A stretch of DNA of 64,000 nt from NCBI GenBank assembly GCA_977030845.1, contig OZ365118.1, positions 16,554,001-16,618,000 on the forward strand. The letters run 5' to 3'. A model generated the notes under the pieces. The model saw only the letters and a program-made list of their open reading frames with translations. It ran no database searches and had not been told where the DNA came from. Source of the DNA: Fimbriosthenelais zetlandica (Eukaryota). Every line of letters begins with the position of its first letter. Position 1 is the first letter of the stretch. A program made the position numbers and the translations under genes. Of the stretch, positions 28,908-56,364 are shown piece by piece.

Positions 28908-31900
28908 GTGAGTGCCTTATCCCCATTTAAATTCCCTAATTTTGGAGGAGTTTCAGCAAATGTCCTCATCATTTTTCTTGAAGTATTTCTTATGTTCTTG
29001 AAGTATTTCTTACGTTCTCGCAAAATGTATTATATGACGGCCCATCTAAAGCCAATACTTTGTATACATTGTACTGGGAAACATGTATGATGTGTCGGTC
29101 CCTTGATGATCCAGACCTGTCGACTACATACTGGACTATCCCCCTATACACCTCTCCAGGGTGATGCAGTGTCCTTCTCCTGTCCCTTTTTTTCTGTCCC
29201 TGTGATGCGGTTTCCGTTTTTACCTTCCTCCTCCCGACAATGTATACAAAATCTCAGTGTTGTAAATCAAAACCAGTCAGTGAAATGGTAAGGTTGATGT
29301 CTGGGTAAGTTATGTCATAAACTCTCCTTACATCAAGCCATGTATAAAGAGTTTATAATATATATACCGGGAGCTGCTCCTTCTGATGGGGAGAGCAGTA
29401 TCCAGCTCCTCAGCCCCAGCCGAGCTGCTCATGGACTCGTTCTCAGACAAGATTTACGTAAGTAAGGAGCTAAAGATCCTAGTTGGGGGTTACATTGTCC
29501 GTTTTTTAAAGTTTGAGTTAGGGGGGAAGTTTTGAGATGTTATTGGGAAATTTGGAGATGGTTTGTTGAAACTTGCCTTGTCATTTTGACATTTTTAATG
29601 TTGATTTGATGTTGATTTGATTTGAGTTGATGTTGATTTGAAATGCCTTGACAACTTGAACCTATGTATAGGTTATACTCCGATCATCCAATAATGCTAT
29701 GCGCCTTGGAGAAATAAAATAAATAAAATAAAATAAATTAAATATATTATGGAGATAAATGCAATGAAATATAAGTCTGGAGAAAATAGACTGCCATAGA
29801 TTTGACGCCTTCAAAAATTGCCTGGAAAATTAGAGAAGAATTGATTTTTTTAGGCTGTGAGTTGAGAGATGAGTATTTGGATTGTGAGCATGGACAAATC
29901 CATGAGCATGATGGGACGGGAGATGGCAGTTGTGAATGAGGGTGACAGAGTCCAGCTTACCATTCTTGTTTATGACCAACTAACCTGTCTCCAAGCCTGC
30001 CTGAGTGACAAACCCCCCACCCCCACCCCCACCCACAGTCCCACACTCCACCCCAAGTCACAAACCACCCCCCACGATAGAAGCGTTTATAGACTTATAT
30101 CACGGCTCCTTTTAAACAAGTGGATCTCTCTCTGTAAACCAGACGAGCAGAGATTATGCCAAGAATGCCGTTTATTCTACCGCTGTCTTCAAAAACGCCT
30201 CCAAAACACCGACAGTGTTAATCAGCTCTCGCCAAATTCTCTTGTTGATCGCACCACTCCACTTCTGCCAATTCCCAGTGGTGCGTCTCGTAATATATTA
30301 ACTATAATTGGTTTTTAAACGGTGATAATTTCTCATTTGCTTTTAAGTGTACTTATAAAGATTTGAGCCCAAATACGTGGCCATATATAGACCAATTTCA
30401 AATATTCTGATGCGCAAAAATCGCCAGACTTTTTTATGTTATTGCAATTACTGCCTAAGATGTTGCACTGAAATTACGATGAGAGCTTTCCAAATCAGGT
30501 GTCTGTTTCATAATTCTGCGCTACATTACCTCGCAGTAAACACATCTTATTTCTGAAATGGCCCCCTGTAGGCTTTAAAGTATATTTGGCTGTAGGGATT
30601 TCCCTCTCTCTCTCCTTGGTTCAGGCATGTATATCTTGTATTCTTTTTCCCATTGCGTCTGCAGTATAGACATACTGTATAAACTACCCATGGCCGGGCT
30701 GTTGTTTTTGATAGGCGCACATATAGATATGAAGATACACATATAGGAGGAGTTTTTCCTGGCTGGGATCCATGCCAAGACGCATGTCACCCAGGCTAGA
30801 GGTAACACTGTCCATTGGCTGAAGCCAAGCGACGGCCCTGTCCTCTCCCCCAGCGAACACGCCATAAAACACGCCGGCTAATTTGTTTTACTTCTAGCCC
30901 ACTCTTGACTGTTTGTCTGCGCGATGAGCTTTGTGTATATGACCCTGACCCCCCACAACAACATAGCACATAATTCCCTGGATAAACTCCACTGTCCTCC
31001 CTGTATATATATCAACTGAGGCGAGGGATTGAAATGTTCCAAGTGTCCCAAACCTACATGGTTAAATATAGGCAAGAGAAAGGGTCACCCTACTCCTGGC
31101 TCTGAATTCTCTCTTCCTCGAGACATTCTCTCGAATTATTCCTCTCTTCAAACCTAAGAGGAAATATCAAAGAGGAATTGATCAATTAGAAACTCCCCAA
31201 ATTTGACAATGAAATCCCCAGATTTATTCCTTTAAATTCTAGTAAAATTTAGTTACTCATAAGTCCTCTCCGTTCATTTTTTATGCACTTTTCAACACCT
31301 GTTATCTTTATTCCCTATCTAGTGAAAACTACAAGGATAACTTGGCCTAAATATATTAAGATTAGTAAGAAAAAATTAAGAAGGAAACTGAGGTGTCATG
31401 AGGGAATTGTTGGCTCGGGTTCAAGTAGACTTTAATGTCTCATCTTAGGTCGGACTTCCCCAAATCCAGCACATCTCCTTTTGACAAAGGCACATTAGTT
31501 TAACACTTCCATCTTGAATTTGTGACTTATATTTCTTGGACGCTTTTCAAGATGATAAGTGAAAAAGTGAATGCGAATATCACAGACCTTATTAAGATCT
31601 AATTCATTATACGAATAAAATTCCCGTATATGAATTTCTTTATTGAAATAAGGACAAATAACCTTACTCATTTGACTTAGTATAATAAGGCTTGTGTAAG
31701 AATAATTTCATTCATGTATTCAAGCACTAATGCCAAATATAGGTTCAGTATGACCCCTTAGGTCCGGAATTCGGTACCAAAACATCCCACATTCTCTTAG
31801 TTAATCCAAGACAATGGAACAATCCGCCTTCCCTTATCCATCCAAAATAACCCTATGTTATTTTAAAAACGTAATCATCCCAATAGACAGTCATTCTGGA

Positions 31901-32756
31901 ACAATTGATTTCTTAGAATGATCTCAAAAGTCGGATATAGACTTAATTATTCCATTTGGGGATCAGTTCTCTGCCACCCCCGAGTTCTCACTGTCTAAAT
32001 GTGAGGTACATGTACTAAAGTTCCCTCTCGGCATTGTTTGTAAGGAAGTATCACTTGTGTCACATGCACATTAATGCATCTTGAAGCATCCTTCAGGCCC
32101 ACGCATGTAAACATGGTCAAAGAATAGGTCAGCCTATACTTTCTCACTTCTCAGCAAGTGCGCTAACAGAAACTCAGATAAAATGCCAGCATTTTATGAC
32201 AATTTTCCTTATACAATACCCTGAAATAATTTCACAAATGATTCTGAAATTAAACCAAAATGTCTTGACTACTATAACAGAAATTACTTGAAGTACCAAG
32301 ACTAACAATTGGTTCCAATGCCCATTGAGCAAATTGAATGCCCATTTGACCTTACATTCCTCGCAATATATTCATTGTTTGACGATTTTGTGTGGTCAAA
32401 ATTACAAAAAATGCCCTGGTTTCATTTTCGATTATCACTCAGTTATCATGACATGTATAGGACCTTTATATTGGTGAACCATCCATTGACCCGTGCGGTG
32501 ACTCCTTTCTTCCGTACTCCCATCCTTCCATCCGCCTATTAGTAATTGTCTATTATGTAGGTGTAGGTGTACTGAAGAACCTCTAGGAAACCTACATCAT
32601 GATCATGCATTCTATTTACATGTATTCACTCTCTTACCTCTTAGGCAATATGTGTAGGAGTATCTGGGACTGTTCCATAAAAATAATATCCCATAGATTT
32701 AACTTTGGCTGACACTGTAATGCAACTTCCCCCAACCGTTAAATTATAAATCAATT

Positions 32757-32851
32757 GGGGCCATTTCATAAGAAAAATCTGTCAATAGATAATTGGTTAT
32801 GTCTTTGAACAATGACTTACGTGTGGCGCATCTTTGTTATGAGATGGCCCC
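32757..32851. mobile_element. Small MITE, same GGGGCC family
   Basis: Left end GGGGCCATTTCATAA versus right-end reverse complement GGGGCCATCTCATAA (14/15 match). Confidence 0.6.
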
Positions 32852-33679
32852 CTCATTGAGTAAGTCCCTCACTTGTCGTCACTCTAATGGAAAAGCACTC
32901 CATCCAATGGCACAGTTATGTGCCCCTCTTCAGGCACCGCAATAAGGCACCCAAAGCCCTTCTTTATATACATTTTACGTGTTTATATTTTGTCACTGTG
33001 GACATCTTTGTGTATGTGCCTTTCTGGGTCAATTTCAGGGTTAACCAAGGGGGAAATCCTCAATATCCCGGGTGGTTCTCCTTCCATTATTAGACCGACC
33101 ATGGTTTGTTTATCTCCCGAGGACCACAGGGCTGGGGCTAGTCTGTTACTCAGAAGGATAGAAGATTGACAAGCCATTCAGATCTATACTCCAAATCCTT
33201 ATAGATCTACAACACTATGACTTGAATATCATGTTCGAAGATTTTATTTAAAGAAGAAATTAAATTGAAAAGATGTATGTCAAAAAACAGAACCCCAGTA
33301 TGATTAGGAACGTTTTTGATAAACTGTGACAAATAGAAAGAGCAGATTCATGAACCAATATCACAATTGTCACTGTTGACAAACCATGTCTGCGTTTGAA
33401 TCTTTAAAAAAAAGCAAATTAGTCAAACTAAGCAATTGAAGATTGGGTGTGGAGATGATGATGTTTTCACCAGGTAATCTGTAGACTAGCATGTGAAGGC
33501 CGGGTGGAGAGAGCAGTCAGGGCCTGGTACCTGACACTGTGAGCTGCTCATAAACTGCTCACCCAGACCATGAGGTGACATGGAGAGAGAGCCACAAAGT
33601 CATAAACCCACACCTGAAGCTCATACCCAATTAAATGACTGCAAGTCAGACCATGTCTACTGAATAAAACACTCACTCA

Positions 33680-33790
33680 TACTGTCAGTCAGACAGTCAA
33701 GACTGCCAGTCAGTCACTCGGTCAGGACTGCCAGTCAGATAATCAGACAGGACTGCCAGACAGTCAGTCGCACAATCGCTCATACATTCC
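33680..33790. repeat. Degenerate (CAGT/CAGA)n repeat with GACTGCCAG units
   Basis: Three GACTGCCAG units among CAGT repeats. Confidence 0.65.
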
Positions 33791-36700
33791 ATCACTCTCT
33801 CACTGTGTTGATCGCTCACTGTCTTGCTCACTCACTCACTGTCTTGCTTGAAGTGGCATTTAAAGAACTGACCTCACAAGCTCTTGCATAGCTCTGATCA
33901 TGGCTTATTTGCCATCTTTTAATGCATATTATTTTTCTCAGAATTTGAAAAAATAAAACGCAGGAAACTTTCCTGAGAAATCCATTCAAGTGTATACCCC
34001 AGAAACTTCTCACCTTGCCCTCATGAAACAATGCATTTGATTCTTTACCAAACATAAACCTTGAGAAGGGATCTTTGCTTCTAAGAAATGAGCTGAGATT
34101 GTCAGCTTTAGATAGTGCATGGCGGAGCTTCATCCTGACTGTGGTAAGTAAGCTGGTGGAGGGGGGATAGGGGGGTCCATGAAGCGGCGGCAGTGTCAAG
34201 AGCAAGTGGATAACTGGCTAGCGGCCAAGGAACACACCAAGTGCTGGTTTTTACCACCTCCATGCCTCAGCCTTGGTTTATAAAGTGAGACTAGAGGAGG
34301 GCACCAGATGGTGCATTCTAATTGATATGTTTCACTGAGGCCATGACACCGCCTTTGGGAACCCCAACATTCTTTGCCACCACTACCCCCACCCCCACCC
34401 CCCACCCCTTCTCCATTGATCCCCCACAATGCCGGGGTCATGTATACACCCATGTATTTAACATCTAACCCTCCTCCCCATTCCTGATCTCTTGTTTTTA
34501 TTGGAGCGATATGATTCCCTCTCCGACTCGTTCCCTGGTTATGATCTATCGGGGGAGCTGCTCCTTGAGGAATTGCGCTGAACCAATTGTGGGAATGAAT
34601 GCGTTTGATTGCTCTACCCCACTGGTATATATCAGCCGAATACATAATAATAATCCTCCCCGAGCTTTCCTAATCTCAGCTCAACTTAATCCTATAGTGC
34701 TGGATATATACACCCCTTCCACCAGTAGAGATTAGAGATTCCCATATATACAGGCATGAGCAATACAATAAAATAACGCATCCCAATGTTCATCTTCATC
34801 CTATATAATACACTCTTTTAATGGATTAATTCCTGTTAAACTATGGTACAAATACTACATTACCATTTAACGCTTGTCCTTTAGGAGATATGTGATCAAT
34901 TCTAGAATTGGTCGTTAATAAAAAAAAACCCAATATTCCATGTGACCATTCATTTTAGAGTATTAATAATGCGACTATTATTACTGACAAATGAGTATTT
35001 TATTTGAGAGCATATAATAGTGGTGTATCTGTGGTGATCTCTGGAGGGTAAGGGGAGACGGAGAGGGTGGTATTTGTTGTTCCAGATGGGCCAGGCCTAG
35101 TTTGATACCTTGAGTTGCTCAAGAGGCCCTCGAGACAGCCAGGCCCTGTCTGTGTGAGACGCTCCCTCTATACCAGTGTCACACGTGTGTGTATCCCCAC
35201 CCAAAACTACCATCCACCCTCCATACCCAACAAAATCATTCCAACTACTCAAAATCCCCATCCTTCTACCCTATCTGCCCTTAAATCTTCAACCCTATTG
35301 TATACTATATGCCCATAAAATTTCTAACATACTCTACAACAAATGCACTTAATATTTCTTCGCTATGCCCATAAAATATTTCCACTAATATTCCCATGAA
35401 CATTCCTTTTTGGATGTTCCCTTGGTAACATATTTGTTCAGAAATAGTAAGAAAATGCAATGACAGTATATTGTTGTCAATGTAAAATTATATTTTCAAT
35501 ATTTCAGGTTTATACCTACCATGCCTTGAAACATTATGTTGGCCTGTTAGAAATACGCCTCGTTGAAGAAACTTAAGTCGAGATAATAGGACAAAGTGGT
35601 GATTAAATTACTGAAAACAACTCCCATGAACCATTCATAAGTAACTTAGACCTTGACGCAGTTCTTGTCTCTGGGAAAATTAACTTGAGACATTGTCAAT
35701 TGGTGATTGCATTGTCTCCCTATATCTCCCATAGTCAATCATTCCAGTCTAGACGCCCTAGGTTTCTAGGATATACAACCATCCTAATCCGTGCTATCTA
35801 TTCATAAACTAAACCATTGTTACTGCCACCTCGTGCAACTTACTCATAATTTATTACTTCCATAAGTCATGTATGCTCTCCAGTCTGGCTCTGAGCATCC
35901 CACTTGTGTCCAGTTGCCCCACCTACCGCTGGCGAACCATTCGGAGAATTCTGCAACCCCCCAAGTAAGCATTGGCGAGAACGATTTATGGAACGTAGTG
36001 TAAACTTTGCACAGCTGCTTGGCTGTTTCTATAGACTTAGCTATTCTAGTAAGAAACCTGCACGTCTGGCTGGATCCAAATGAAGAGACCTTCGTAACGT
36101 TAACGGTTTTTTTTGCTCACAGTAGTTGCAGGCAGTCTCCCACTTACATGCTTCACATGGTCTCACATGTGATGCCATCATGCTGTAGATCCTATAGCCA
36201 TTCAACCCCTCATCCTACCCTTACCCCCCCCCCCCCACACACACTAGGGGTATGATCCATAGTATGGTCCAGAGATGAACTTTGACGCTCAAATAGGCCT
36301 TGTTTTTTTTGTCAAAATCTTGGACACTCCCACCCCAACCCTTTCAGAGATGTTACCCCTTCCAAAATCCTGAAACCACCCCAGTACCTCTCCCCAGTCT
36401 CTCCCTCCCTACCCCTCAGTATACCCTCCCACCCTTCCCTCCCTCTCTCCCACCCCACCCTTCCCACCCATGTCTCACTGTACTATGAATGTGTAGACCT
36501 GTTTGTCGTTCATTTCCTCTCCATCGTATTAGACCATTACCAAATGAAACCGAGCTATGATTGCCTCGAGTGACTGCACTGAATGGCTTCTTGGAAACCT
36601 CGGTACAATTCCAAACTGCCAAGCATTGATCAGAAAGTGCAATATTTGACTTTAGCTACAGAGACACCCCACTGTCTTAGCACATAACACTCATATTTTG

Positions 36701-37789
36701 ATCATATTTTGACAAATCTAACGTGGCTATTCAAGCAGAGATCCTGCAGACATTGTATATAAGCAGTGCCTATGTTAGATAGATACCCATCCAGGGCCCT
36801 ATCCCATCTCTTACCATCCCACCAACCAACCACCACCTACCACAGCTATCATAGAAACTTTAACAGACCAGTATATGATCCCCTGATACTTTACCCGACT
36901 CCCATTCTATTTCACCACTGAGCGCATTAGCCTGTTCTGTTTACTTTGATAGAAAATGAGAGGACGAGTGGCGAGAGCACTTAGTGACTCGTAAGAGCTG
37001 CTCTAGGGATCTGCTCGTCTCGGGGGCAAGATGGGAGGGCCACAGTTACCACTGTTGGAGGCAGACAAAAAGCCTGTACTCCTTGACCATAATCTAACTG
37101 AGTTAACAGCTTCACTCCCACCTCCCACCAATACCCCGAGCAGATCGTGGAATTTGCATTTTTGCCCCCTTTTGCTTTTTTTGCTCTCGCCAAAATCTTG
37201 ACTTTGTGTATTTAAGAACATTCTTTTCGCCGTGGAACTACGCCCGTTGGGTTTGGATATCTCCACTGTGGGTTGATTTGTCCTCTCATATATTTTCCTT
37301 GACACCGCTCCCAGTTCCCCTGCAATCATTTCTTTATGCCTTCGGCAGTGGTTTACTTAAAACAAGTGCCTGAAATGATGCATTTTGAATTGATATTGTG
37401 TTGCGGATCTGTCAGTGCCCCTCATATGAAGCCTTAGATTGCATCTCGTGCAACAAAAATCACCAAGGGTGTAAATGAGTTCTATACACAATGACTAAAC
37501 CGACCGCAAATATATTGAGAACTATTTTTTGCTTCATGCCAACCTGGCTAGACTTCTTAACTTGCTCAATATTTTGATTTTGAAAAAAAAGTCTTCTTCT
37601 GTCGGGAATAATATGATTATAGAGTTATGGAAGAGGTTGTATGGAAAAAGACCACCAGTCACCAGGCATGGAATTGACACTTTGCTTTTACCACTCGCTT
37701 CCGAGCCCCACCCACCGGCCTCTCCCGCAACCTCCCATCCACTCGCATTCTATCACGTCCCGCCAGACACAAATGCTACCCATGTCGTT

Positions 37790-38070: not shown

Positions 38071-41000
38071 TTTTTCATATACATTGTCCCTTTATCCAAA
38101 ACCATTCTTCCCAGCTTTACTTAATGGAAATACTCATAGTACAATAGAAATGTCTTCAATTTGATCTAGATGGAAACAATTGCTGTTTTGTGACACACTT
38201 GTGTGTCGGATGGGAATGGGAGACGCACATTGAGAGGCAATGTTTCTCTCACTTAACGGACTACATGTCTCAAAGTCACATCCAATATATACACATGTCA
38301 GGGCCCACGCCTCGGCTACCTCCTTTTTCGGAAACTGTTTCTGACTTTTTTCCCCTCCCTTCTTCCATCGCCTGTTTTCCTTGGTCCTTTAGCAAAACAT
38401 AGCCGTGCATGGAAAGGGCAGGGTCTATGATACACGGGCCATCTCTCCTATGATGTCTTCCAGCTATGCTACACCCCAAGAAAAGAGGCCAGAGAAACTG
38501 GGTGAGAAATAATGCTAAAGATGTATATATTAAAGAGACATGAGCAGCTCCTAGTGGTTATATCCAGAAAGATGCCATTAAAAATGACTTTAGATACCAG
38601 TGCACCCTTTAATTTAACCATATAGTCTTCCCCTTTAATATAAACCATTAGATCGCAATGAGGACATTACCCTCTCTCTACGTCTCTCATCAGACTCTTA
38701 CCGTGAAAATCAGTTAAAGCTATTGATGCTGATTTATCACCAAAAAGCTGATAGAAAGGGCGTGAAATAGTGCGTCAAACACGGTGCTCGTTCATCCCGC
38801 CGACTTATTACTATCCCTGCTGCTTTTTTGACCACCCAGTTAGCTCTTAAAAAGCTCCTGTGAGCAGTAGACCTAAAAGGTCCTGCTCGTCCCACAATTG
38901 CTGAGAGCTGCTCGATGACAAGCGTGACTACGTCTCTATCTGCTCCATGTGTGTGGTGGAGTTCTTATAGCTGGAACAGACCAGGGCATTTTTACAGTCG
39001 CGCTCATGGCGCAGGCAACTTTTATTGTCATGCTCTGTCTTTTTATGCTAGCTAGCCAAGAGGGCGCCCGCCTAAATCAAGTAAACGCATATAACCCCTG
39101 TGACTCAATTAGAAAATCTAATTGACATGGTCAGTTGCATAACTAGGATGCATTTGCAGTCGGTTCCAGGCATTAGATGTACTATATGATTAAGATGCTT
39201 GTCCCTATAGCAGGGTGGTAGGCTAATACAAGCTGCCACTAACACATGCAGACAACAAATCCTCCAAAGCATTTTCTTCATTTACTAACAAATCCTCCAA
39301 AGTACTTTCTTCAATTACTTACATAAGTACATCTTAAAAAATACGACTTTCCTGATCATTTATTTGGTCCCTTCAAGGAAATTGAATATCTCAGTTCTGA
39401 ACAAATGAGTATCATACCAATTTTGGTCAGTCAAAACGGAGGAGCACTGTAGTTGAAATATTCCTTATCAGATTTCCAACTGCTTGAAAAAGTTTGATTC
39501 AGTTCCTTCCCTAATGAGAGTTACATGCACATATTTTCTTATGGGAAACTATCCTAGATGAACTGACTGTCCCGTATTTCAGGGCGTTTTTCGGCCCCAC
39601 CATCTGTACTGTTATATATATGTGGGGTCAGGGAAGTATAAAACAAAGCATCTTGTAAAGTACAGTCAAACTTTCACGCTTGTACCCCGAATCAAGACAC
39701 AATGTCCTCACGCCTCACCGACCACAGTGGCCACCAATTGAGTTGTAAATCTCCACTGTTTTCTACCATCTTTTTCAACCCGTACATGAACATGATTTTA
39801 TCACATTGGTGGGAACACCCATGGGGCTCTTATGAAAGGCTTCCTTATAGGCATGGCCTTGAAAAAGGGTGTCTGGCCTATAGGACAGGGACCTGGGGCC
39901 TGTTTCACAAGAAGGTATACATTGACTTTTAAAGCTGATTGTTGGCACGTATTTTTGTTAATGATACCCCCGTGAACATGGCCTTGAGATGCCAACTCCA
40001 ATTAAGTGAACTTCTCTCTGCGTGGAAGGTGCACTGAAACCTTGGCCCACCATTTGATAATATGGAGTTAACTCTGATAGTCCCACAATGTTGCATTATA
40101 CATTTTTATCCCTAGTTTTTCACTTTAAGAATAGTTCCTTTATGGAGGATATTGTTTTAAAACAATCTTTCACACACTGAAGTCCTGCTTAGTCTTTATT
40201 TTGCCTGCTGACATGTTATTTGATTGATTAAGATTTTAAAAGAAAACATGTATAGTTCTGATAGGTAAGTTAAGAAATTAGACCATTATCAATGCTTCTT
40301 CCATATATATGTTTGCATTTCAAAATTCCAATGTCAAAACCCAATGGAATTTTGTCCAGACAAAGATGCTCAAAAGCAAACCATTCCAGGGGCCCATCTC
40401 ATTTTTTTAAGTTCTACATCTGTCGGTGGAAATGCTAGCACAAGTTTATTCCACAATGAGACCAGATTACTTTCTCAGCTCCATAGATATGGATGGGAAT
40501 GAAATGCGAACTAAAGCGGAGGAAAAAGGCAATGTTGACGCTGCGGTGTATTGGGAATGTGTGTCTCGCCAGGTATTTCAATAGTGACTGTCACACAATG
40601 AAAGAAAAACACCTCTCAGGTGAACGGCGCCCTCCGTCCCTGTGTGCATTTATTCATTAGAGGTCGGCCTTGCTAGCTCATGAGCCAAGAGCCCTTTATT
40701 TATTAGTGATGTTGAAAAAGCCTGTGATGATACAAGCTATGTTAACAATGGACTAGAATGCGGCGTATAGGTCGGCGAGTTGAAGACAAATGATACTCCC
40801 CGCCGCCCATGCTCACTCTGCCATTTCCTGGTCGGAATTCCATGATAGCATTACATGCTATGTACTTTACAATGCTCTAATTCCCTCCAGGTACATGTTT
40901 ACTCTACCTTTATTTCTTTGCACTCGTTCCGGTCATTTATGTCATTAGGAAGAAATGAAAGAAGTGAAAGTTAGTGGAATTTAAAAAAAAATCAAATGAA

Positions 41001-42610: not shown

Positions 42611-42668
42611 ATGTGCCTCTCACTGTCGTACATGTGCCTCTCATTGTCGTAAATGTGCCTCTCAGTGC
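42611..42668. repeat. 21-bp tandem repeat, ~2.7 copies
   Basis: ATGTGCCTCTCA(C/T)TGTCGTA(C/A) units start at 42611, 42632 and 42653. Confidence 0.8.
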
Positions 42669-44353: not shown

Positions 44354-47300
44354 TAGAGAATGGGAGAATCATAAGTTTACCATCTCGGCATCTGCTTTGT
44401 CGCACCATAACTTGAAGTTTTCTATAGTCTGACATGTCTATAAGCATTAATATATACATCCACCATGCCTGGATGAGCCATCATTTACTATAGGATTTAT
44501 ACCCGCTCCTTCCATCACCACTCTCTCACTCTTACACTTGACCTTACGTTCCCAGCTTCTCTACCACCCTCACTATGACCATGTGAAGTGTAATTTATGA
44601 TGACCACCTCGGCGGCCCACCCTTCTCTTCACCCTCGGGGTGTCCTTACATCTCCTCCCCTCCCCCCCATCCCCCCCCCCATCCCTCCCGAACCATCAAC
44701 ATGCCCTCGGTGCCTCCTCCTGTGTTATTTTGGGGTGGGCTTCCCCTCTGACCACATCCAGGGTCGCCTACCCTTCCCTCCATATATCAGATAGTCTGAC
44801 CAGACTACACCCAAGTACTACAGCTCTTCCTGCATCTTCCCCATCCCTACCCCCACCCCCACCCCTACACCCATCGCCACCATCACCACAACCCACCCCA
44901 GCCCAAATGGCCAATTAGAAAAGCTGGCAGTTTTGGCGCCATGGCTTCGCCGGTGGCTTCGCTCATCGTATACTGGCTTGTGCTGGTCTGGATCCGCCCC
45001 ATCGTCGGCTGTGGGAACTGGTGGTGATGTGGCTGCCTCATGTGGCAGTGTGTGGCTATAAATGTATAGTTATAGGTCCGTTCTCACTTTATGATCCGAT
45101 TGATGTGTTGAATCGGCATTGAATCGGATCTAATAGTGTGGAGCTGAAAAACTGACATATTAATATATTCACTTCTATTAAATGATGCTCTCCCAATCAT
45201 CTGTTAGTTCTGTAGCCCATTGTATAGTGTGCAGTAGCTCCTGACTTCAGATAAGTTTGAAAATTACAATTGGGAGACAAGATTCAAACTTAGAATCGGG
45301 AGCCATTGGGTCTTGTAGTGTGTCGGGGGTCTAAGTGAGTGTGTCGGTGACTGGTAATCCGCGCCACGCGCCTCAACCTGCGGGTCTCACGTCTTTTCCT
45401 ACAGGGAAGAGTTTTTATGTGGTCAGGGAAGAACATGACAGGATGGCTCGTCTGGCCCGCACCAGAGGCAATGGGCGGACGCCAAGATGTGTATGAGGCG
45501 TAGACGCTGGCTGGCTTTAACGACGTTACCAGAGGCGACGTCAAGACGTCAGTACGTCTCTAATAAGGAACACTAGATCATCGTGTCGTGGTATAGCACC
45601 AGACGAGTGATCCAGAGATAGGGACATGTGTTTAATGTAACCTGATGAAAAGTGCACTCATTTAAACACCTTAGTTTGTTCATGTTGCGAAAGTTGAAAT
45701 CCTGATGTTTCATTCCTTGAAATGTGAAAACTTTAATAATTTTGTGACCACCTCTTCAGGGACTTAAATGGTGCTTCAGTTGAAATTTTAATGCATATAG
45801 CTGGATTTTACATTTTCAAATCGTTCCCATATAATATTTAAATTTTGGTTTAAAATTATTGAAACATTTCCAAAGAATTTGTCATTTCCTTTTGTCACCA
45901 CTTACTTTCATTGGTTTCGTTATTTGCGTGGGCGGATACGAGACCAAACAAATACCTGTGGTTCGAAAAAAAATTGCAATAAGAAAAATAAAAAGAGGAA
46001 AGGAAAAAAAACCAAACATAAAAGACAGTGTAGAAACACCTGTTGGGAGCGGGGGGAGACGGAAGAATGACAAGTAGGAAATGGAGCTGTCCCTGATGAT
46101 CACACACTCTTAGAAAAGGTGGTAAAACATACAGCCTAAAATATGGTTTAATTTACAGTAGGTTCCAGCGAGCAGGCTTAGGCAGGGCTAGAATGGAAGG
46201 GTCACTTTTTTCTGTAAAAAAAAATAATGGGAAAATCCATTTTCAGTATGTGACATACAATAATTTGGTCATGTATAGAAATGTTATGTTGCGCAATGAC
46301 CTACACCTGTCCTAACCTCCCCAGACCTGTTTGTGGGACTTGGTTGAAGTGCCTAGAAACTAAGTGACTTGGAAGTCATTGACCCAGCTAGAGGGGTATG
46401 TGTGTGAGCTGCTCTAGATCCTTCTGTAGGAGCACCTCGACATATGTGTGTAATCCTCAGTCTAGTGGTTGGCTATAGCCTCTATAGTGTAAAGATGTAG
46501 TGGATTCAAATGTTGCCTGCTCATCATTTCAGAGAAATCTCAGAATGCAGAAAAGTAATATTCAGAAAGGAATGTAGTGCATTCAATCTCATGAGTCAAT
46601 CGTAGAGTACCTAAGTCAGTGAACTATTTAAATATTAAGAAATAGTGAAAACAAACTTTGCATGGGCATTGTTCCTGGAACTGTAATGAATGACAAGTCT
46701 TTTCAGTCAGTACAGTTCTTCCATGTGCCAAGAAGACACTTGGGGGCCAAGATGGACTTGCCAAGCTAAGGTACTTAGGTGGAATCCATTGTCTTAACAT
46801 GGCTATAGCCCAGACCGCCAATCGTCAATATATTGACAAATGGAGGCGCACCCACTTCCGGTGGTCTCATTTTAAGGAGGCATAATTGGTCTCATTGACC
46901 ATACTCAACTCACCTAATCTATCCAAAACATGAAGATATCAATAATCAATATTACACCAGACATCATTACACGCTGTCTTATACAGACCCCCTGCCTTGA
47001 TTGAAGAGCTCTTAGATTCTTAACTGAATAACCCTACATCCATAGACATTCTTCAATTGTGGTCTTAACGCTTGGTATAATTAATCTGAACTCAGTTCAA
47101 TGACCACTAAGCCTATATCCAAGTAGTGTACATGTATGAGTGCAGCCACGTATTCTCTCAATCCATAAGATATGCTATATGATTTAACAAAGTAGTGATA
47201 CTTCTGATCCCCACTCTGTCTGAAAGCATTTCCTAACATATTTCTCTTTTCACAATTATTCTATACTCAGTTTATTTTGACTATCCTCAGTTTATTGAGA

Positions 47301-50180
47301 ACTGACCGAGACCAGCCTTTGAAAGTTCTATATATAAGCAGCTATGTTACGGAATTAGCAGTTGTCAACTGTCTTTACAAAAGTTATTAACTTTGATGTG
47401 GCCTTACCCAAAGGTCCAGTCATGACCCAAACTGACCCCTTGGTTGGCCTGGTGGCTGGCCATGCACCTCCTTCTCAACACATTATTCCTAACATTAGTC
47501 ACATTTTTGTCTCGCCATTTTGAACATTCTCGAGTGATAATATATTATCCAATCAAAATATGTGAAGGATTTATGAATTACACTGTATGGAATAGTTTTA
47601 TGGTTGTTAATGGGCCCACGCACTAAGCTTTGTCTTAGACATGGGGGACCCAATTCATAACAAATATATGCAGCAGTATCAAATGGTTAGCCAAGTCTCC
47701 AATGTCGCACATTCTTTTGTAACCAGCCCCCATATCTCCCTCTCATGGAGAGATAAGCACCTATCATTCCTGAATTGGCAAACATGGCGCTCACCTTTGA
47801 AGTATACAATCATTTAATATCCATCTTCTCCTACTCATTGCTTATCAGCAACATTGACAATTTATAGTTCATCTCTTATGAACTATTGTTCTAACTAGAC
47901 AGTGATAATTACATCAGCAAATATGTGCAGTGTACACAGACTGCTCTCCTATAGTCCATTGATAGCCTCATTCATTGCCAAGCGATCATTATGGCTCTAA
48001 CACACTGGAGGCGTGCGTTCGTTTCTACCTTTTGTGCCGTCTAGAACTGAATGCATTGCTCATGCAAGCATTTGGACATTGGCCTTTCCACAAGCGTTTT
48101 ACCATCCACACTGGATAACCAGACATTCAGACCCCAGATGCATGCTAAGTATCAAGATGTTTTGATCCAAATGATTCAACTATGCGTCTGCATTGTCTCC
48201 AGCGCATTTCAAAGTGCGCATTTAAGCTGCATTTGCATTTCAGACGCATGTGTGGCTTTGAGACGTCTCTAGTGTGTCACTACCTTTACTGGCTCCTATA
48301 TCTCAATCTGTCAAAGTGGATCCAATGATCCAGAGATCTCCAGTACCCACCCCACCCCCTCCCACCTCTCGGACAATAGTACATACGTGTACATACATGA
48401 CTTATAGTGGCTAACCGAGCCGCTCTCCATTAAAAAGAAGAAGAACCACAGGTGCGAACGAATAAATTACAAACAGGCGGCGAGGGCTTGAATGATTAAT
48501 TTTGGTGTTTAGTTCCATGTCTGCCATAAGAACTCTGCTTGCTCGACATGGCCTGGAAAAGGTGGGAGAAAAATTGGCCTCACTCCGGTTGATAAACTTG
48601 TCTGTGTCTTTGATGAATTCATTTGAAATGTTTAAAAAAAGAAGGAAAAAGGAGAGCTAGTGTTCTATGTCAAATACCACCTCTTATGTATACAGTGATG
48701 AGACGGAGAATTGTACTGTGCTACAATTTTTTTATTTTTCGATGTCAGAGGTTTTAGATTGGTATTTAGCTGAAACAAATCGGGGCAGTAATGGCCTTGA
48801 ATTCCCAACTTTGCAAAACCAATTAGATGTTTTCTTCACCTTGCTCAAAACATGGGCATTGAACTTTGATTGAAAAGTTAATTATTGATCCATTGTGAGT
48901 GACATCCTTCAGCCCCTGAAGCTATTTCGGACAAATAAGTTTAATAAATTAACGCGTAAGCATTGCTATTCCTTTCCCAGTATTATTAACCCTCTGGCTA
49001 ATTCACCTTAATTTGACGAGGGGAATAAAGCCCGTCTACTAGCCGGTGCCTCTCTGACTACATCCACAGCCCGCCGTTTTGAGGAAGAGATTCGCTTGAG
49101 TAATACTGGAAGAGGAAACTGTCCATTACCGCCATGTTATACACACTACAGGGTCACAGAAGCTGTGGGAAGTTAGAAAAGCCCACCAGATGAAGTCTGC
49201 CCAATGTGGTCTTGATTATTTTCCTCTTCCTTCCTCTAGCCGCATCTTTTGCTGAACTTACATATATACCTACACCCGAGCCATCCAGGGGCGCATTGCA
49301 TAACAAAGATGTTCCATGTTAACCCATGGTAACTCGACGGGTCAGTTTCTCTGAAGCACTGTCTATGATAATGTATTAACCATTGCTGATGAGATGCAGC
49401 ATAAAGACTATTGTTGCAATTTGAAAAGAGCAGGCCATTCTGTGCCTACAGCAAGTTTCCTTTTCGTCCTGAAAAAGAACTTATAAATTGCTGATCCTTG
49501 ATATTAATTGTGTGTGTATTTTATATACATTTATGCATTTATACACTGCATTTGAAATCAAGATCACTAGTCTAGTATGCAGGAAAACAATTGCTGAAAT
49601 TAAACATTTTCTAAAGTTAGGGGCTAGATCTAACATACACCTAGCCGCTCCCAACTGCATCCGCCCCACTCTCCAAGTTCCAAGGTTATACTTGAAGTCA
49701 AGTTTCCTCACATAGAGTGGGGGGAAAGCAGCGACATGACATCATGCCTCATAGGTGTTTTTCCCCTCCGATACTCTGAAGGATCAGAGAGATTTGTGTC
49801 AAATCAAATAATTGAGATTTCGCATGTACGACAGCTACAGATGCACTATAGGGAGGGTGAGTGGTGGGGCAGGTATAGGGTGGGTGGGGTGTGGGGGTCG
49901 GGAGCGGACCATATGTTAGTAATCGTAACTTGAGATTTACCTGGAACACTGTGAATCCCTCTGCTACATCTTCATTTCTAGGCAGTCTCTGCCCCATGTA
50001 TAAAACTTTACTGACTTTTTCATGTTATATCCTGTTTGCATCTATTAAAATCCAGGGTCCAGTTTCTGGAGAAAGTTGACCAACTGGCACACTTAGCATT
50101 TTGGTATTAAATGTAACCCATTGTGGTTAAGAATCATTAGATGTATCCCATTTTAGTTATGTAGCCTAATTTGGTTACGG

Positions 50181-50635
50181 AACCTTAGGTAATTTAGCCC
50201 ATTTTGCAATTATGCAACATTGGGTAATATATAGCCCATTTCAGTTATGCAACATTAGGTAATATAGCCCATGTCAGTGCAACATTAGGTAATATAGCCC
50301 ATGTCAGTGCAACATTAGGTAATATAGCCCATGTCAGTGCAACATTAGGTAATATAGCCCATGTCAGTGCAACATTAGGTAATATAGCCCATGTCAGTGC
50401 AACATTAGGTAATATAGCCCATGTCAGTGCAACATTAGGTAATATAGCCCATGTCAGTACAACATTAGGTAATATAGCCCATGTCAGTGCAACATTAGGT
50501 AATATAGCCCATTTCAGTGCAACATTAGGTAATATAGCCCATGTCAGTGCAACATTAGGTAATATAGCCCATGTCAGTGCAACATTAGGTAATATAGCCC
50601 ATTTCAGTGCAACATTAGGTAATATAGCCCATTTT
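50181..50635. repeat. 30-bp minisatellite (AACATTAGGTAATATAGCCCATGTCAGTGC)n
   Basis: 12 full units from 50251 to 50610, a partial unit at 50611 and two degenerate units upstream; no unique spacers. Confidence 0.97.
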
Positions 50636-53600
50636 CATTATGAAACAAGCCCCTGCAACGACCAGGTAACTAAGTTGTTAATAGTAAGAAATGATTTACA
50701 TCCTGGTTTCAGTCCAAATCCCGACCTCTCACTTATTCACTTTTACCTGAGCATGGAGTGAGGCGCCGTGGTTATACATTGTCCACTTTTTAACATGAGG
50801 CCCTCACGGTGGCCCGTGATGGGAAATACATAAGTCAAATGAAGGATGATATATAAAACACACCTGGTCCAAATTGAAGCCACCTTCTCTACATTGGAAC
50901 CAATCGCTCCCGCCCATGTATCATTCCATGATCAAAACGCCCATCTAATTGGAGCGGTTGTCCGTCCCACTGGCTCATTGATATAGCCAGACTTATGATT
51001 TTTACCTACATCAAGCTTTCCCGGAAGCTGCCCCCTTTGATCCCGCAAAGTGCATATGTTTTTAGTGATATTTCACTCGAGTTTTACGATGGTTTAGGTG
51101 GAGAGAAGCGCCGTAACCCGTGCATAGTGGTACCATGGAAATGTATACCTTATTAACCATTTGCCTTGGTCTGCATCAAAAGCTAGTTCAGAAACTCTTT
51201 TTCAACTGCAGTTGACTTGGAGGCAATGCATGTACAATTAAAATGCATGTATATACATTCATTTATAGACATGCACTTATAATGTCATTTCACAGCAATG
51301 TAAAGCAATTTGTGGCCCCATCCATTGATAAAATACATTTGTATGAGCTGTATATCTACATATCCCAATCAGTGGGAGCAGCTCCGATTGACTGGCTCAT
51401 CCATCTGTTGCCCTCAACCTTTATGAAGTTATCTTTTATCTATATTTTGGTCAAGAATAAAAGGTAGCGTTTATGACCATTCATCTTGCTGTGTTAAACC
51501 TCCCCCACACCAGGCAATGGTCTCAAATTTGACTCACCATTTTTGCTTGTCAAAAGCAGACTAACATCATAGCAATGATGTGTAGATACCGCGCGCCGCG
51601 CCGCGCTACGGTGGCCCATAATTGCCTGGACAGGCGGGGGCTATAATGACCCGAGACATGGTGCAGGACATCGTAGAGATTACATATCTCTCTGACTCAC
51701 TGAGCACCTCTCCTGATGCCACTTGCTCATCCGATGAGCCAAGGAAAGCTCCGAGAAATTAGATTGTTCAGTCGGTTATTGGTCAATGGCAGGGATTTGG
51801 TCGCAACAGATCAGCTCGTGGGCGTGACCATGTGTCGCTTGTAAATGTCATAGCCAGATCCAAGGCCATATTTCATAGACAAGTGTAAGCAAACAGTATT
51901 CTGATTTATCCTCAACTTGTCCTTGACATCATCGTTGCCCCTGGCTGCATTGCGCTGTTTTGAGTCAGCCGAAAGTTGGTGGCTGGACATAAGATGCGAT
52001 CAAGAGGATTCTTGAGGCTAGAAAACACTCAAGTAATTCTGCCTATCATGTCATCAACATGGTATTAGATACTTATCATAGTTCTTATCCCCCTATAGCA
52101 AGCCATAATTTGCAAGTGTCCTTCTCCACTCAGTGCTGCAAACTGGGATGTCAAAGGCCCTTCACTATGGACCCTGCCGTTTGGGAAGCGCAGGGCATTT
52201 TGTGCTGACAGCATGTTTCCCCTTCGACGTGAGATAACTGTGACATAGTTGATTGGACATTAAAGAAATATCCCTCCATCCATGCATCCCCGACCAAACA
52301 TTGCTCATTGCCCTGATCTCTTATACCTGAAAAACTCTGTTATTCCCACCTTCCATACCTTCATCCCTGAAGCCCAGCTCCTGATAACGCTGTAACGTGG
52401 AAGTTTTTATCCTAATTTACTTTTCAATATCTCGGTCTGCAGACTGGCCGCGATCTGTGTCTACATGTATATACGTTCCCATGCCCTCATGGAAAAAACT
52501 TTCAAAACATATCACATGTAGTTCAGGGCCAAATGGCTTCTGATATGCCTTCTAAGCTCCACCCTCCCTTCCCCACCGGAAATGTAATCTGTAACATATC
52601 ACCCATCTCTGATCAAAGATGGCAGCCTTGATAGAACGATAAACCAAAAAGAATTAATATCTTTTTCCTTGATTCCTCCACCGACCTCCGCTCACAAGAA
52701 GCGATACACGAGATGGTTTGTGTATGGTGCCCACAGGTGTGGCTAAATGTAGCAGTGATATATGTAGAGAGCTACTGCCCAATGCAGGCTCTTTTTCTGC
52801 ATCAATTCACAATGAAATAGTATGTTTGGAAGTTGTTTTGGTCTATAGGAATTGAACAGTTCCTGGAAAAGGGGGTGGGGTGGATTTCAGCAGATGCAGG
52901 GAGAGGGGGAGCAGCTTGGAGAGGGATGGCAGATGGAGAGAGGGATGGCAGATGGAGGGAGCTAATTTGATGCAGATCTATGCAGATTTATTTCATAATT
53001 TTCCCCTACTGTATACTCATTTTTAATAAATAAAATTCATGGAAAATTTCCATTCCATTATCTAAGTTAATCCAGGGTTGCGAGACTATATTATTGGTGG
53101 TCCAAGGTTGATCCATTTGTACAAACAACTCAACTTGCTCCATAGATCATTCTGGTTTTGAGAAGATTTTATTGATTATCTATGGATTTATGATAGATTA
53201 GTCGCGTAAATCCAAAAGAGAATATATCCCTCGATAATCCCCAGGGCTTTAGCTGACTGACGTTATTTGAATCTCTCCCATTATGACATAAATCTTCCCC
53301 ATATTAAGTCCTTTGATTTGCAGTTCAATGTGATTTATATCTGTCAGCCATTTTCACCCCAACAATAGATCCACTGACGGATTAGAACTTTATTATTTCA
53401 ATCTCTTCTTTGTGATCATGTCCATCTTTTTGAAGTGCCAATCAAACTGTCTCTGCCTTTAATTGGCATTCAATATCAGCTGGATGCCCTCGAAATGCCA
53501 CTACCTCAACTTCAATATCAGAAAAATGATTATCATAATTGCTTTCTGTATTTCGAAACTGGATTTATGATGTTGTCTTTGGCTTTTATATCGGAATGAC

Positions 53601-56364
53601 ATAGCACCGTAGCATTCCAGGCACTTCTGACACCTAAACAATGGCGAAGAATGTTTTGCCTTGATTAACCATTACCTTTTGGTTTATCAATTTGTATTGA
53701 GTGGCCGACACAAGCTTAGCAACAACCTGTGTGCACCTAATGATGAATGGACTCTAATGAAATGAGGGACAAAATCACCATGTCATGAGATGAGTTGTGG
53801 AGGTGTTGTCAATAGCGAGATAAGTGATGTAAACAATGTCTATCATATGTAATGAGCTTTTCTTTATTAATTATTGACATCTCGTATATCTTACTTCATT
53901 CATTATAAGGACAGCCATTGCAAGGTCAGTCATCAATGACAAAAGGGTCGTACATATAATCTATCGTATCACTCTGGCACTGCCCTGTCAATCCATTGAT
54001 GTCCCACCATTGAATCAGAAGGATCATTTTGAAGGGTAATGTTTGTTCCTAAACTTATTCAGAAGATAATCCATAATGTGTCCCAATCCTGTTTAATTAA
54101 TAACTTGATATATCTTTGATGCACAATGTTTACTTGACAACTTAGGGAAATATCAGAAGGGAGTTTCAAAACAAAAACTGCGAAAATAATCAATGATAAG
54201 TCTATATATAAAAATGTAGGGCTTATGAAATGCTCATTGGAACATTGCAGTAACATCCAACCCTCTATCCCACCCAGTGCAAAGGTATCAGTTATGATGA
54301 ATTCTAATTGATAATAGTAGCCAAATACACCTCGCATTTCTTAAGAGCACACTGCCTCTTTAACCTTGTACCCAGCCCCATCCCTCTGTAACCATTCGTC
54401 TATCACGTCCCCGTTCCCATGCCGCCCACTCCAGCCTGTGAAGTCTCATGGACCCTGCTTGCTAATCGACTTGTAGTTCTTGGCCTCCAATCTACTGTGC
54501 CGGGGAGAGGGCGTGGCATGAGCTGCTCATTTTTGGCCGCGACACCCACAATGGGAAGGTCTGCTAGGCGAGCGGCTCACCGCTGTTTCCGGTTTGGCCT
54601 GCCTTGCCGGAAGTGGGCGTGGTTTGGGGCGCCTTCTGGCGACATCAGGTGGTATCTCTCATCCCCCCACTCTTCCTGCCCTCTCCCTCACTTCACGCTC
54701 TTGCAAGTTCCTCTAAATTGTCTCTACCAAAAGTTTGGTTCATTTCAAAATGGCAATAGTATCATATCTGAATTGCTTAACTGAGCTATTGGCTATTTAG
54801 CATTTGACAGATTTCTTGCCATTTGACCGGTGCCTCAGTGTTGAAATGCTCTGACATTATTTGTCCCTTACATGCATTTTCTTAATATTAGTACTTGTCT
54901 ATGTTAAAAGTTAAACTGTGGGTCATTTTTGACATTTACATGAGTTACCTCAGTGTTAAATTGCTCTGAGAATTTCACGTCTTTTACATACATTTTCCAC
55001 ACCGTAATCTACTAGAGTCCTTTTGGGGATGTACGCACTTCCTTTCCTGCCGTTTCCGACCCCCCAAGCCTTGCTTGTTGACCGCGAAAGGCGGCTTGTT
55101 TTGACGGCGAGGTCATGAGAGAAACATCTCTCGATATATTGTTTAGGGTGGACTGAAGTGTATATTTGTCGAGGAGAGCCGAGCATTGCCCCAGCCACCC
55201 CGACCGCCGATGGTCCCTGCTCGAGGAATGAATGCCCCATTGTCACTGTGAAGAGACGTCAATTTCAAAACCAAATATTGAGTCCTCAGTCGGCGCTACC
55301 CTCCCCACTTACAATAGCTGTAGGCTATAAACTTAATCTGACATTTTGTATAATAAGAGAAATGTAATACCAGGCGAGATAAGTGTCTGTCTTCATGGGT
55401 GATCCTAGAGGTCCCTGGTTACTAATACCTCCCCCCCCCCCTCCATCACCCCTACCCCTCAACAATTAATTTACCTGCTGAGAAACTTCAGAAAAGCTGT
55501 ACCGAATAATGACTTCATGATGCTTAAAAATAAGCAAAGTGGGTATTTGGAAGGGTGAGCTGTGGCTGGTCCCTGACACACTAGTTACTGTGTCATATAT
55601 ATGTGTGTATGTGTATAGGTATAACATATACATATATCTATAGGAACCAGTGTGTATATGGGTTGTGAAGTGTGCCGTGGACCAGGACTGATGTTACCCT
55701 CTCTGTCTATAGGTTAATCCCCCTGTCTCAGCTAACAAATATTGACCAGCTTCCCCCTATAGGTGAGGATAGGTACAAACAATAACACAACTACCCGCAA
55801 ACCCAGTCATGCGGCAAATTTCAAATCTTGTTTAAAAGTCAAGAAATATATCATTTAAAAAAATTGATATTAATGCTTTTTCGGTTTGGTTTCGGACGGT
55901 TTTTTGAGGTCTGTCATGTGGCAGGGAGAGGCGACTGCTTGATGCCTGATGCACACAGAAGTCCATTATTAAATGTGGCAGTGGAGGGGTGGTGGAGGAT
56001 TCTTTGTTATGGGATTAGGCTAAATCTCACCTCAAACACTTGTAGTTGTGTGACGGGCGTTGTTCTGGTGGCTGCCAGCTCGCAGACACTCTACCTGGCG
56101 AGGTCAGGTCCATGCTTCTTACCACCGCCACATGTTTTACTTAAGGTGAACGGGGCGCTCAGCATGTATGCTCTATGGTTATAGGGGGGTGCAGGTTTTA
56201 GGGTTCCCACTGAGACTCAGGGGAAACCTGGAAAAAAACATTTCAGACAGGGACAACTCAGGGAATTCGAGAAAAACTGATAAAAATCAGAGAATTTCAA
56301 TACTGATTTCGAAGGATAATCTTTTCAGCCTTCGGTTAATTGTATCTTATGCCATCATGGCCAG

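What the first reader, a model, noticed from the sequence alone, without database searches (positions are those of the whole stretch)
29371..54528. Eleven exact copies of an unexplained interrupted palindrome GAGC(T/A)GCTC confined to 25 kb of MICU intron 2
Exact copies start at 29371, 29422, 33541, 34555, 36995, 38542, 38905, 43128, 46406, 51376 and 54520 (8 GAGCTGCTC, 3 GAGCAGCTC). I saw none by eye in 1-29.3 kb or after 54.6 kb. A rough i.i.d. estimate at ~40% GC gives about 0.1 copies in 25 kb. The flanks share no homology, so it is not a transposon fragment. Six copies extend to an 11-bp or longer palindrome, up to ATGAGCTGCTCAT at 54518. Near-matches occur at 35112 and 43109 (GAGTTGCTC) and 52909. 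I do not recognise it as a known TF motif. Inference: a homotypic site array for a dimeric DNA-binding protein marking a regulatory domain, or an intronic RNA element (the + form contains a YGCY core).
Basis: partly seen in the sequence, partly recalled or inferred. Interest (0 to 1): 0.75.

Follow-up and report, generated by a model that had tools for sequence, protein, structure and literature searches.

The report
Private 9-letter palindrome array in intron
One 25-kb stretch of a worm's MICU gene intron carries 13 letter-perfect copies of the mirror-image word GAGC-N-GCTC in otherwise unrelated DNA; this is far beyond chance and absent from the same intron of two other annelids, and it most likely marks docking sites for a two-part DNA-binding protein, though nothing shows what binds.

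Summary
GAGCWGCTC occurs 11 times at exactly the stated coordinates, against 0.2-0.3 expected. With a free centre (GAGCNGCTC) there are 13 copies, all in 29371-54578 and none in the other 38.7 kb. One-mismatch copies are about four times denser inside that block.

The copies are bare words. I found no flank homology, no repeat family, no target-site duplication, no donor element, no Rfam or Pfam signal and no robust partner motif.

Five copies have a second full or near copy within 13-51 bp. The first and last gaps of the array are doublets 51 and 50 bp apart, so the block looks like a discrete 25.2-kb unit.

The orthologous intron in two other annelid assemblies (22.7 and 36.5 kb) has zero copies. 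The array is therefore lineage-specific and not a conserved MICU feature.

My best reading, at about 0.4, is an array of recognition sites for a symmetric (dimeric) DNA-binding protein. The rivals are:
- words written by a mobile element or by repair (0.25);
- a giant non-coding insertion carrying its own binding-site lattice (0.12);
- an RNA element (0.04).

Genome-wide frequency, polymorphism and binding could not be tested. Earlier notes of this scan describe similar locus-confined word fields elsewhere in this genome.

The parts
29371..54578 (.). The whole block: 25,208 bp holding all 13 GAGCNGCTC copies and 10 of the window's 13 one-mismatch GAGCWGCTC copies
29371..29430 (.). Left terminal doublet: two GAGCTGCTC copies 51 bp apart (start to start) with a 42-nt spacer. 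It lies 464 bp downstream of the conserved MICU exon.
33541..33549 (.). GAGCTGCTC. Half-sites GAGCAG at 33511 and CTGCTC at 33555.
34555..34563 (.). GAGCTGCTC. Shares the 14-mer GGGAGCTGCTCCTT with the 29371 copy.
36995..37016 (.). GAGCTGCTC plus the one-mismatch copy GATCTGCTC 13 bp on. A further variant, GAGCAGATC, is at 37138.
38542..38550 (.). GAGCAGCTC
38862..38945 (.). GAGCTGCTC at 38905, flanked by half-sites at 38862, 38883 and 38940. Includes a 27-bp imperfect palindrome at 38862-38888 whose outer arms are GAGCAG and CTGCTC.
43109..43136 (.). One-mismatch copy GAGTTGCTC, then GAGCAGCTC 19 bp on
46406..46438 (.). GAGCTGCTC, then the one-mismatch copy GAGCACCTC 24 bp on
48417..48425 (.). 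Centre-C copy GAGCCGCTC
51376..51384 (.). GAGCAGCTC. With its flank it forms a 23-nt, 87% inverted match to the 29371 copy. One-mismatch copies at 51702, 51809 and 52909.
54518..54578 (.). Right terminal doublet: the 13-bp palindrome ATGAGCTGCTCAT and the centre-G copy GAGCGGCTC, 50 bp apart. It sits in a GC-rich patch.
28751..28907 (+). Conserved MICU exon (second coding exon), which fixes the gene, its strand and the intron

Best explanation
The block 29371-54578 is a lineage-specific array of recognition sites for a symmetric, probably homodimeric, sequence-specific DNA-binding protein. Each subunit would read one GAGC half-site, and the single central base pair would be largely free, though mostly A/T.

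Full sites are spaced 0.4-4 kb apart and are often accompanied by a weaker copy or half-sites within 13-51 bp, which would allow cooperative occupancy. Doublets about 50 bp apart mark both ends of the array.

Shown: the word, its symmetry, its excess, its confinement, its satellites, the lack of any repeat context, and its absence from two orthologous introns.

Inferred: that a protein reads it, that the protein is a dimer, and that the block acts as one unit.
For: - Excess: 11 copies against about 0.25 expected; 13 against 0.39 with a free centre.
- Dyad with no information outside the 9 bp, and all four centre letters seen.
- One-mismatch copies run at 0.40 per kb inside the block against about 0.1 per kb outside, P about 0.001.
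- Five close partners against 0.94 expected, P about 0.003.
- Half-sites CTGCTC/GAGCAG: 8 within +-80 bp against 1.1 expected.
- Local G+C is 0.47 against 0.42, P = 0.012.
- Not a repeat, not coding, not a known RNA.
- Array ends marked by 51- and 50-bp doublets, P about 5e-4, a post hoc test.
Against: - No known factor could be named. A formal motif-library comparison was not possible, and the exact words appear in no searched paper.
- Binding sites usually show graded edges and more degeneracy than 13 exact copies to about 7 excess near-exact copies.
- Spacing of one site per about 2 kb over 25 kb is unlike ordinary enhancers.
- No partner motif survives correction.
- CpG content around the sites is not raised.
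- There are zero copies in the orthologous 22.7-kb and 36.5-kb introns of two other annelid assemblies, and none within 1.8 kb downstream of the exon in a third relative.
- There are no occupancy or accessibility data.
Confidence: 0.4

Rival explanations
1. The copies are words written into the DNA by a mobile element or a repair process. They would be short palindromic scars, made of end remnants joined across a central mismatch, left by repeated local insertion and excision. This is the reading proposed for the TA-NNNN-TA palindromes of this genome.
For: - Sharp edges and random flanks.
- The A/T centre is what mismatch resolution gives in the canonical Sleeping Beauty footprint TAC(A/T)GTA (my own knowledge).
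- The ratio of exact to one-mismatch copies fits neutral decay at about 7%.
- Regional confinement fits local hopping.
- The array is lineage-specific.
- TAGGCCTA, TACATGTA and TAGATCTA are also enriched in this window, and the TA-flanked type is also enriched in the two other annelid loci.
- Earlier notes s1-191759 and s1-188360 read such words as scars.
Against: - No target-site duplication of 2-9 bp at any copy. The outer letters G...C cannot themselves be a duplicated palindromic target in the way TA can.
- No element with GAGC...GCTC ends in the window, and no family of longer palindromes with these arms.
- The constant part is the centre and the variable part the outside, which is the reverse of end-remnant scars.
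- Copy density is flat across the block with doublets at both ends, not peaked around a donor.
Confidence: 0.25
2. The block is one large non-coding insertion, either a giant non-autonomous transposon or a transduplicated segment. It would carry a lattice of binding sites for its own transposase, with paired sites at each end.
For: - The first and last gaps of the array are doublets of 51 and 50 bp.
- The bases abutting the outermost copies are ACCGG on the left and ACCGC on the right, a 4-of-5 direct match.
- Earlier notes describe, in this genome, a 3.4-kb transposon with eight exact 16-mers in unrelated DNA (s1-228813) and a 16-kb Mutator with motif-array ends (s1-217062). I tested neither.
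Against: - The terminal regions are not inverted repeats beyond the word itself.
- The 4-of-5 flank match is weak, with roughly a 10% chance after allowing for offsets.
- There are no transposon genes or domains in 25 kb.
- The interior looks like ordinary unique intron, and it carries TACATGTA copies as its surroundings do.
- No second copy could be sought.
Confidence: 0.12
3. The word is an intronic RNA element. It would either be a binding site for a YGCY/CUG-type RNA-binding protein, or a set of self-complementary 9-mers that pair within the pre-mRNA and loop the long intron.
For: - 8 of 11 copies read GAGCUGCUC on the sense strand.
- The T and A forms are perfectly complementary to each other.
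- The first doublet lies 464 nt after the exon.
Against: - An 8:3 split does not differ from 1:1.
- Exact dyad symmetry and all four centre letters point to duplex DNA, not a strand-specific RNA site.
- No Rfam match.
- Nine base pairs is weak for pairing across kilobases.
- Not conserved in the orthologous introns.
Confidence: 0.04
4. The pattern is chance, a compositional bias, a hidden repeat family, or an assembly artefact.
For: The window was picked by eye, so selection of a striking word plays some part. Several secondary statistics here are post hoc.
Against: - P is about 6e-16 against a Markov-2 background, and the word is the top palindrome of the window.
- No shuffle out of 100 exceeded 2 copies.
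- No flank homology at word size 7, and no self-matches.
- The word matches no sequencing adaptor or ligation junction that I know of (my own knowledge).
- The decayed copies and half-sites argue for history rather than a pasted string.
Confidence: 0.04

Closest known systems
Homotypic clusters of transcription-factor sites with dyad symmetry (bZIP-type 3-1-3 or 4-1-4 sites such as TGA(C/G)TCA; gene-wide RFX or TCF site fields noted elsewhere in this genome)
   Same: Two short inverted half-sites around one loosely specified base. A strong excess confined to one gene's non-coding DNA. Strong sites accompanied by weaker copies and half-sites within tens of bp.
   Different: No known matrix fits, as far as I can recall, and no library test was possible. 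The copies are unusually exact. Spacing is on the kb scale over 25 kb. Doublets sit at both ends. The array is absent from orthologous introns, whereas the TCF field at Axin was reported as shared among spiralians (s1-207662, which I did not test).
Canonical Tc1/mariner excision footprints (Sleeping Beauty TAC(A/T)GTA; TA-NN-NN-TA words such as TAGGCCTA in this genome)
   Same: A short sharp-edged palindrome, an A/T centre, random flanks, regional clustering, and lineage specificity.
   Different: There is no TA or any other target duplication, no donor element, an odd 9-bp length with G...C outer letters, and a constant centre rather than constant outer ends.
Subterminal transposase-binding repeats (IR/DR ends of Tc1-like elements, En/Spm and Ac subterminal motifs)
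   Same: Two sites about 50 bp apart at each end of a delimited unit, and exact motif copies embedded in unrelated spacers.
   Different: There are no inverted-repeat arms beyond the 9-mer. Nine further copies are spread through a 25-kb non-coding interior. The target duplication is not convincing.
Region-specific recruitment motifs (C. elegans pairing-centre 12-mers bound by HIM-8/ZIM zinc-finger proteins; recalled from Phillips et al. 2009, not read here)
   Same: A short exact word enriched in one chromosomal region and essentially absent next door, scattered through introns and intergenic DNA.
   Different: Those fields span hundreds of kb to Mb and often ride on short repeats. Here there are 25 kb, bare words, and no known reader protein.

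Membership tests
DNA-transposon excision footprint | Flanked by the element's target-site duplication | tested here: not met
   No 2-9 bp direct repeat abuts any copy beyond chance. 18% of random positions show a match of 3 bp or more under the same test.
DNA-transposon excision footprint | Palindromic remnant of the two inverted ends, with the centre set by mismatch resolution | tested here: inconclusive
   The form fits, with an A/T centre in 11 of 13 copies. However, the invariant part is central and the flanks vary, the reverse of end remnants.
DNA-transposon excision footprint | A donor element with matching termini | tested here: not met
   No GAGC...GCTC inverted-repeat element lies within 12 kb spans of the window, and no long palindromes have these arms. 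The rest of the genome could not be searched.
Interspersed repeat / MITE family | Copies share homologous flanks | tested here: not met
   blastn at word size 7 on +-300 bp flanks and a self-comparison of the window gave no cover at any site. The position matrix is flat outside the 9 bp.
Homotypic transcription-factor site cluster | Site excess over background, with local clustering of strong and weak sites | tested here: met
Homotypic transcription-factor site cluster | Match to a characterised binding matrix | not testable with these tools
   No JASPAR or CIS-BP library was on hand. No paper in the held library contains either word. I recall no matching factor.
Homotypic transcription-factor site cluster | Conservation of the site field at the orthologous locus | tested here: not met
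   0 copies in L004 (orthologous intron 14692-37399) and 0 in L005 (38830-75339). 0 in the 1.8 kb after the exon in L009. These relatives are distant: the intron DNA does not align.
Homotypic transcription-factor site cluster | Protein occupancy or open chromatin at the sites | not testable with these tools
   No sequencing run was listed for this stretch.
Known structured RNA family | Covariance-model match | tested here: not met
   No Rfam family reached its gathering score, and there are no tRNAs.
TIR transposon carrying an internal site lattice | Terminal inverted repeats and a target-site duplication at the unit's ends | tested here: inconclusive
   The 9-mer itself sits at both ends, with doublets of 51 and 50 bp. 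The spacers are unrelated. The flanks ACCGG and ACCGC match 4 of 5. No longer inverted repeat was found.

The most novel reading that the evidence does not exclude
This genome may use private exact-word fields as addresses. In that reading, individual loci of about 25 kb are each studded with their own short word, read by a dedicated symmetric DNA-binding protein. Here the field would be a discrete block bracketed by paired sites and sharply segregated from the promoter-centred TAGGCCTA field next door. Another note of this scan reports a different word confined to about 27 kb at the Bsx locus. Such fields could serve domain identity, boundary formation or homologue recognition, rather than classical enhancer logic.
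Probability: 0.1. Interest if true: 0.85.

Novelty: new variant of a known kind. Interest (0 to 1): 0.58.

Why it matters
If a protein reads these sites, this is an uncharacterised motif-factor pair. It would mark out a sharply bounded 25-kb domain inside a gene, in a clade where cis-regulatory grammar is barely known. It would also give a handle on how such domains arise quickly, since the orthologous introns lack the array.

If instead the words were written by a mobile element or by repair, the process leaves a fixed 9-bp palindrome without a target duplication. No described cut-and-paste family does that.

Either answer can be tested with a genome-wide count, one population or haplotype comparison, and one binding assay.

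Tried and rejected
- Decayed repeat family or MITE: rejected. No flank homology was found, and at the roughly 7% decay implied by the near-copies any shared flank would still be visible.
- Coding origin (Glu-Leu-Leu codons): rejected. The copies fall in different frames and strands, and the block's ORFs have no Pfam domain.
- Origin from the hexamer GAGCTC by a 3-bp duplication, or as a 3-bp target duplication: considered because both centre forms follow from it. Rejected because only 5 GAGCTC sites exist in 64 kb, so about 15 would have been needed in 25 kb.
- Composite module with a CCCACAAT(G/T) motif, whose core resembles a Staf/ZNF143 site: 4 of 14 window copies lie within 31 bp of a site. 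Hexamer enrichment does not survive a max-statistic permutation, P = 0.28, so I keep it only as a lead.
- CpG-island association: not significant.
- Tiny elements delimited by motif pairs: no duplications flank the pairs. The TATGTGTGT repeat around 46406-46450 is low-complexity and offset.
- Long inverted or direct repeats at the block's edges: only weak matches.
- Reads: no run was listed.
- More DNA of the same genome: 10 window ORFs are not in the protein collection. A profile search for MICU returned only insects in the rows listed. The nearest relative's contig, L008, stops 140 bp after the exon.
- Literature: neither word occurs in the held library. A search on TAGGCCTA, excision footprint and annelid gave nothing relevant, and the Kolobok paper has no bearing.


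Full report
**The observation**

One hundred dinucleotide-preserving shuffles gave a mean of 0.19 and never more than 2. Markov models of order 0 to 3 give 0.23-0.28. Inside the block alone the expectation is 0.13.

The excess is not inherited from a common sub-word. Of 13 GAGCTGC and 15 AGCTGCT heptamers in the window (both strands), 11 each belong to the 9-mer.

Among all 8-11-mers the word ranks with low-complexity runs and with one 30-bp tandem array. Among palindromes it is first, with P about 6e-16. The window has no N.

**What I added**

- With a free centre the word has 13 copies. The two extra ones are GAGCCGCTC at 48417 and GAGCGGCTC at 54570. All 13 lie between 29371 and 54578, and none lies in the remaining 38.7 kb. 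Thirteen uniform points fall in so short a span with P about 1e-4.
- One-mismatch copies number 10 in the block against about 3 expected, which is 0.40 per kb inside against about 0.1 per kb outside. Two-mismatch copies are not enriched.
- The ratio of exact copies to excess near-exact copies would fit neutral decay of about 7% per site. At that age any shared flank would still be obvious.

**The copies are bare words**

- Pairwise blastn of +-300 bp flanks at word size 7 shows only the trivial overlaps.
- A self-comparison of the window covers none of the sites.
- Oriented by the centre letter, the position matrix is flat outside the nine bases, apart from a mild AT at +1 and +2 in 4 of 11 copies.
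- Bases at +-1 are complementary in 6 of 11 copies, and complementarity is at chance beyond that.
- No 2-9 bp direct repeat abuts the copies.
- No pair of GAGC...GCTC ends up to 12 kb apart extends into an inverted repeat other than through the word itself.
- No family of longer palindromes carries these arms.
- The copies sit in different frames and strands of short open stretches.
- Ten ORFs of the block have no Pfam domain.
- There is no Rfam family and no tRNA.

**Fine structure**

Five copies have a second full or near-full copy within 13-51 bp: 29371/29422, 36995/37008, 43109/43128, 46406/46430 and 54520/54570. That is 5 against 0.94 expected, P about 0.003.

The half-site hexamer CTGCTC/GAGCAG occurs 8 times within +-80 bp, outside the word itself, against 1.1 expected.

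The two tightest gaps, 51 and 50 bp, are the first and the last of the array. With the ends fixed this has P about 5e-4, but it is a post hoc test. Their spacers are unrelated in either orientation. Both inner copies are followed, reading inward, by ATG. The bases abutting the outer copies are ACCGG and ACCGC.

The array therefore looks like a delimited 25,208-bp unit, not the tail of a gradient. Copy density is roughly flat across it.

**Context**

- The exon at 28751-28907 (+) encodes the conserved FASVEYEGQ.YMTPQDFLESV block of MICU proteins. An HMMER search gave 298 hits. Full-length relatives are named mitochondrial calcium uptake proteins and carry EF-hands.
- A candidate first exon starts at 14176.
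- No further MICU exon is detected before 64 kb. The intron is therefore longer than 35 kb, and the array fills only its first 25.7 kb.
- A second palindrome, TAGGCCTA, has 11 copies, all between 1830 and 27914, roughly centred on the putative promoter. It has none in the rest of the window. The two words are thus perfectly segregated along the sequence. The chance of that for random labels is 8e-7, again a post hoc figure.
- TACATGTA is spread throughout the window.
- Earlier notes of this scan read TAGGCCTA as a probable excision scar clustered around promoters (s1-191759 and others). I confirmed its excess here but not its origin.

**Comparison with other genomes**

Two chromosome-scale annelid assemblies hold the orthologous gene. 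Both keep an FGF-domain gene upstream on the opposite strand.

| Locus | Assembly | Orthologous intron | GAGCNGCTC copies in the whole locus |
|---|---|---|---|
| L004 | GCA_048127485.1 | 14692-37399 (22.7 kb) | 0 in 104 kb |
| L005 | GCA_903813345.2 | 38830-75339 (36.5 kb) | 0 in 105 kb |

Intron positions are and counts. A moth MICU locus also has no copy.

TA-NNNN-TA palindromes, above all TACATGTA, are enriched in both annelid loci. GAGCNGCTC and TAGGCCTA are not.

A third relative's contig (L009) has no copy in the 1.8 kb after the exon, where the window has its first doublet. The closest relative found (L008, 83% identical over 190 bases of the upstream intron) ends 140 bp after the exon.

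These species are too distant for neutral intron alignment. The result shows that the array is not an ancient MICU feature. It does not show how each copy arose.

**Interpretation**

The anatomy is that of a site read on duplex DNA by a symmetric dimer:
- two 4-bp inverted half-sites around one loosely specified base;
- all four centre letters present;
- satellites of weaker copies and half-sites.

That is the reading I rank first, at about 0.4.

Against it stand the exactness, the kb-scale spacing, the lack of any surviving partner motif, the lack of conservation, and the lack of a known factor.

The scar reading (0.25) explains the sharp edges, the A/T centre, the local confinement and the lineage specificity, and it has company in this genome. 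It fails on the one feature that defines cut-and-paste scars, because there is no target duplication and the outer G...C cannot be one. It also predicts constant outer ends and a variable centre, which is the reverse of what is seen.

The giant-insertion reading (0.12) is suggested by the terminal doublets and by earlier notes of exact-motif lattices inside transposons of this genome. But the ends are not inverted repeats beyond the word, and the interior is featureless.

The RNA reading (0.04) and chance or artefact (0.04) are weak.

**What could not be done**

- No sequencing run was listed for the stretch, so polymorphism and expression are untested.
- No motif library was available.

Noticed in passing
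window 1830-27914: TAGGCCTA has 11 exact copies, against 0.4-0.7 expected. Five of them fall in 11800-12632, just upstream of the candidate MICU first exon. There are none after 27914, so this field and the GAGCNGCTC field abut at the exon without interleaving. From memory, the word overlaps the vertebrate ZFX/ZNF711 motif AGGCCTAG; I did not test this.
   Followed up: partly
window 29431-29458: Directly after the second motif copy there is an ATG in a good context, then nine codons (MDSFSDKIY), then a consensus donor (GTAAGT). This looks like an exon, but its phase does not match the preceding exon and no homologue has this peptide.
   Followed up: partly
window 28152-28339: A 190-bp stretch of the upstream intron is 83% identical to a contig of a related species (L008, Logan run ERR14368248), while the surrounding intron does not align. 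It is a candidate conserved non-coding element.
   Followed up: no
window 50181-50647: A tandem array of about 14-15 copies of a 30-bp unit (consensus begins TGCAACATTAGG), 92-96% matches, inside the block.
   Followed up: partly
window 38862-38888: A 27-bp imperfect palindrome whose outer arms are GAGCAG and CTGCTC (the half-sites of the motif), with inner arms GACCT and AGGTC. It lies 17 bp upstream of the 38905 copy.
   Followed up: partly
window 34586, 38892, 43138, 54546: CCCACAAT(G/T), whose core resembles a Staf/ZNF143 site (from memory), lies within 10-31 bp of four motif copies, in either orientation. Only 14 CCACAAT occur in the window, but the association does not survive a hexamer-wide permutation test.
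   Followed up: partly
window 54300-54800: A GC-rich patch (G+C 0.54-0.56) with two GGGCGTGG boxes and a CCAAT holds the right terminal doublet. It could be an internal promoter-like element.
   Followed up: no
whole window: Very many long G/C homopolymer runs (99 overlapping G9 or C9 words) and GGGTGGGG-type words. TACATGTA and TGTATACA are each about 5-7 times over expectation.
   Followed up: no
L004 and L005: Both annelid loci keep an FGF-domain gene immediately upstream of MICU on the opposite strand. No FGF domain was detected in the window's upstream ORFs by Pfam.
   Followed up: partly
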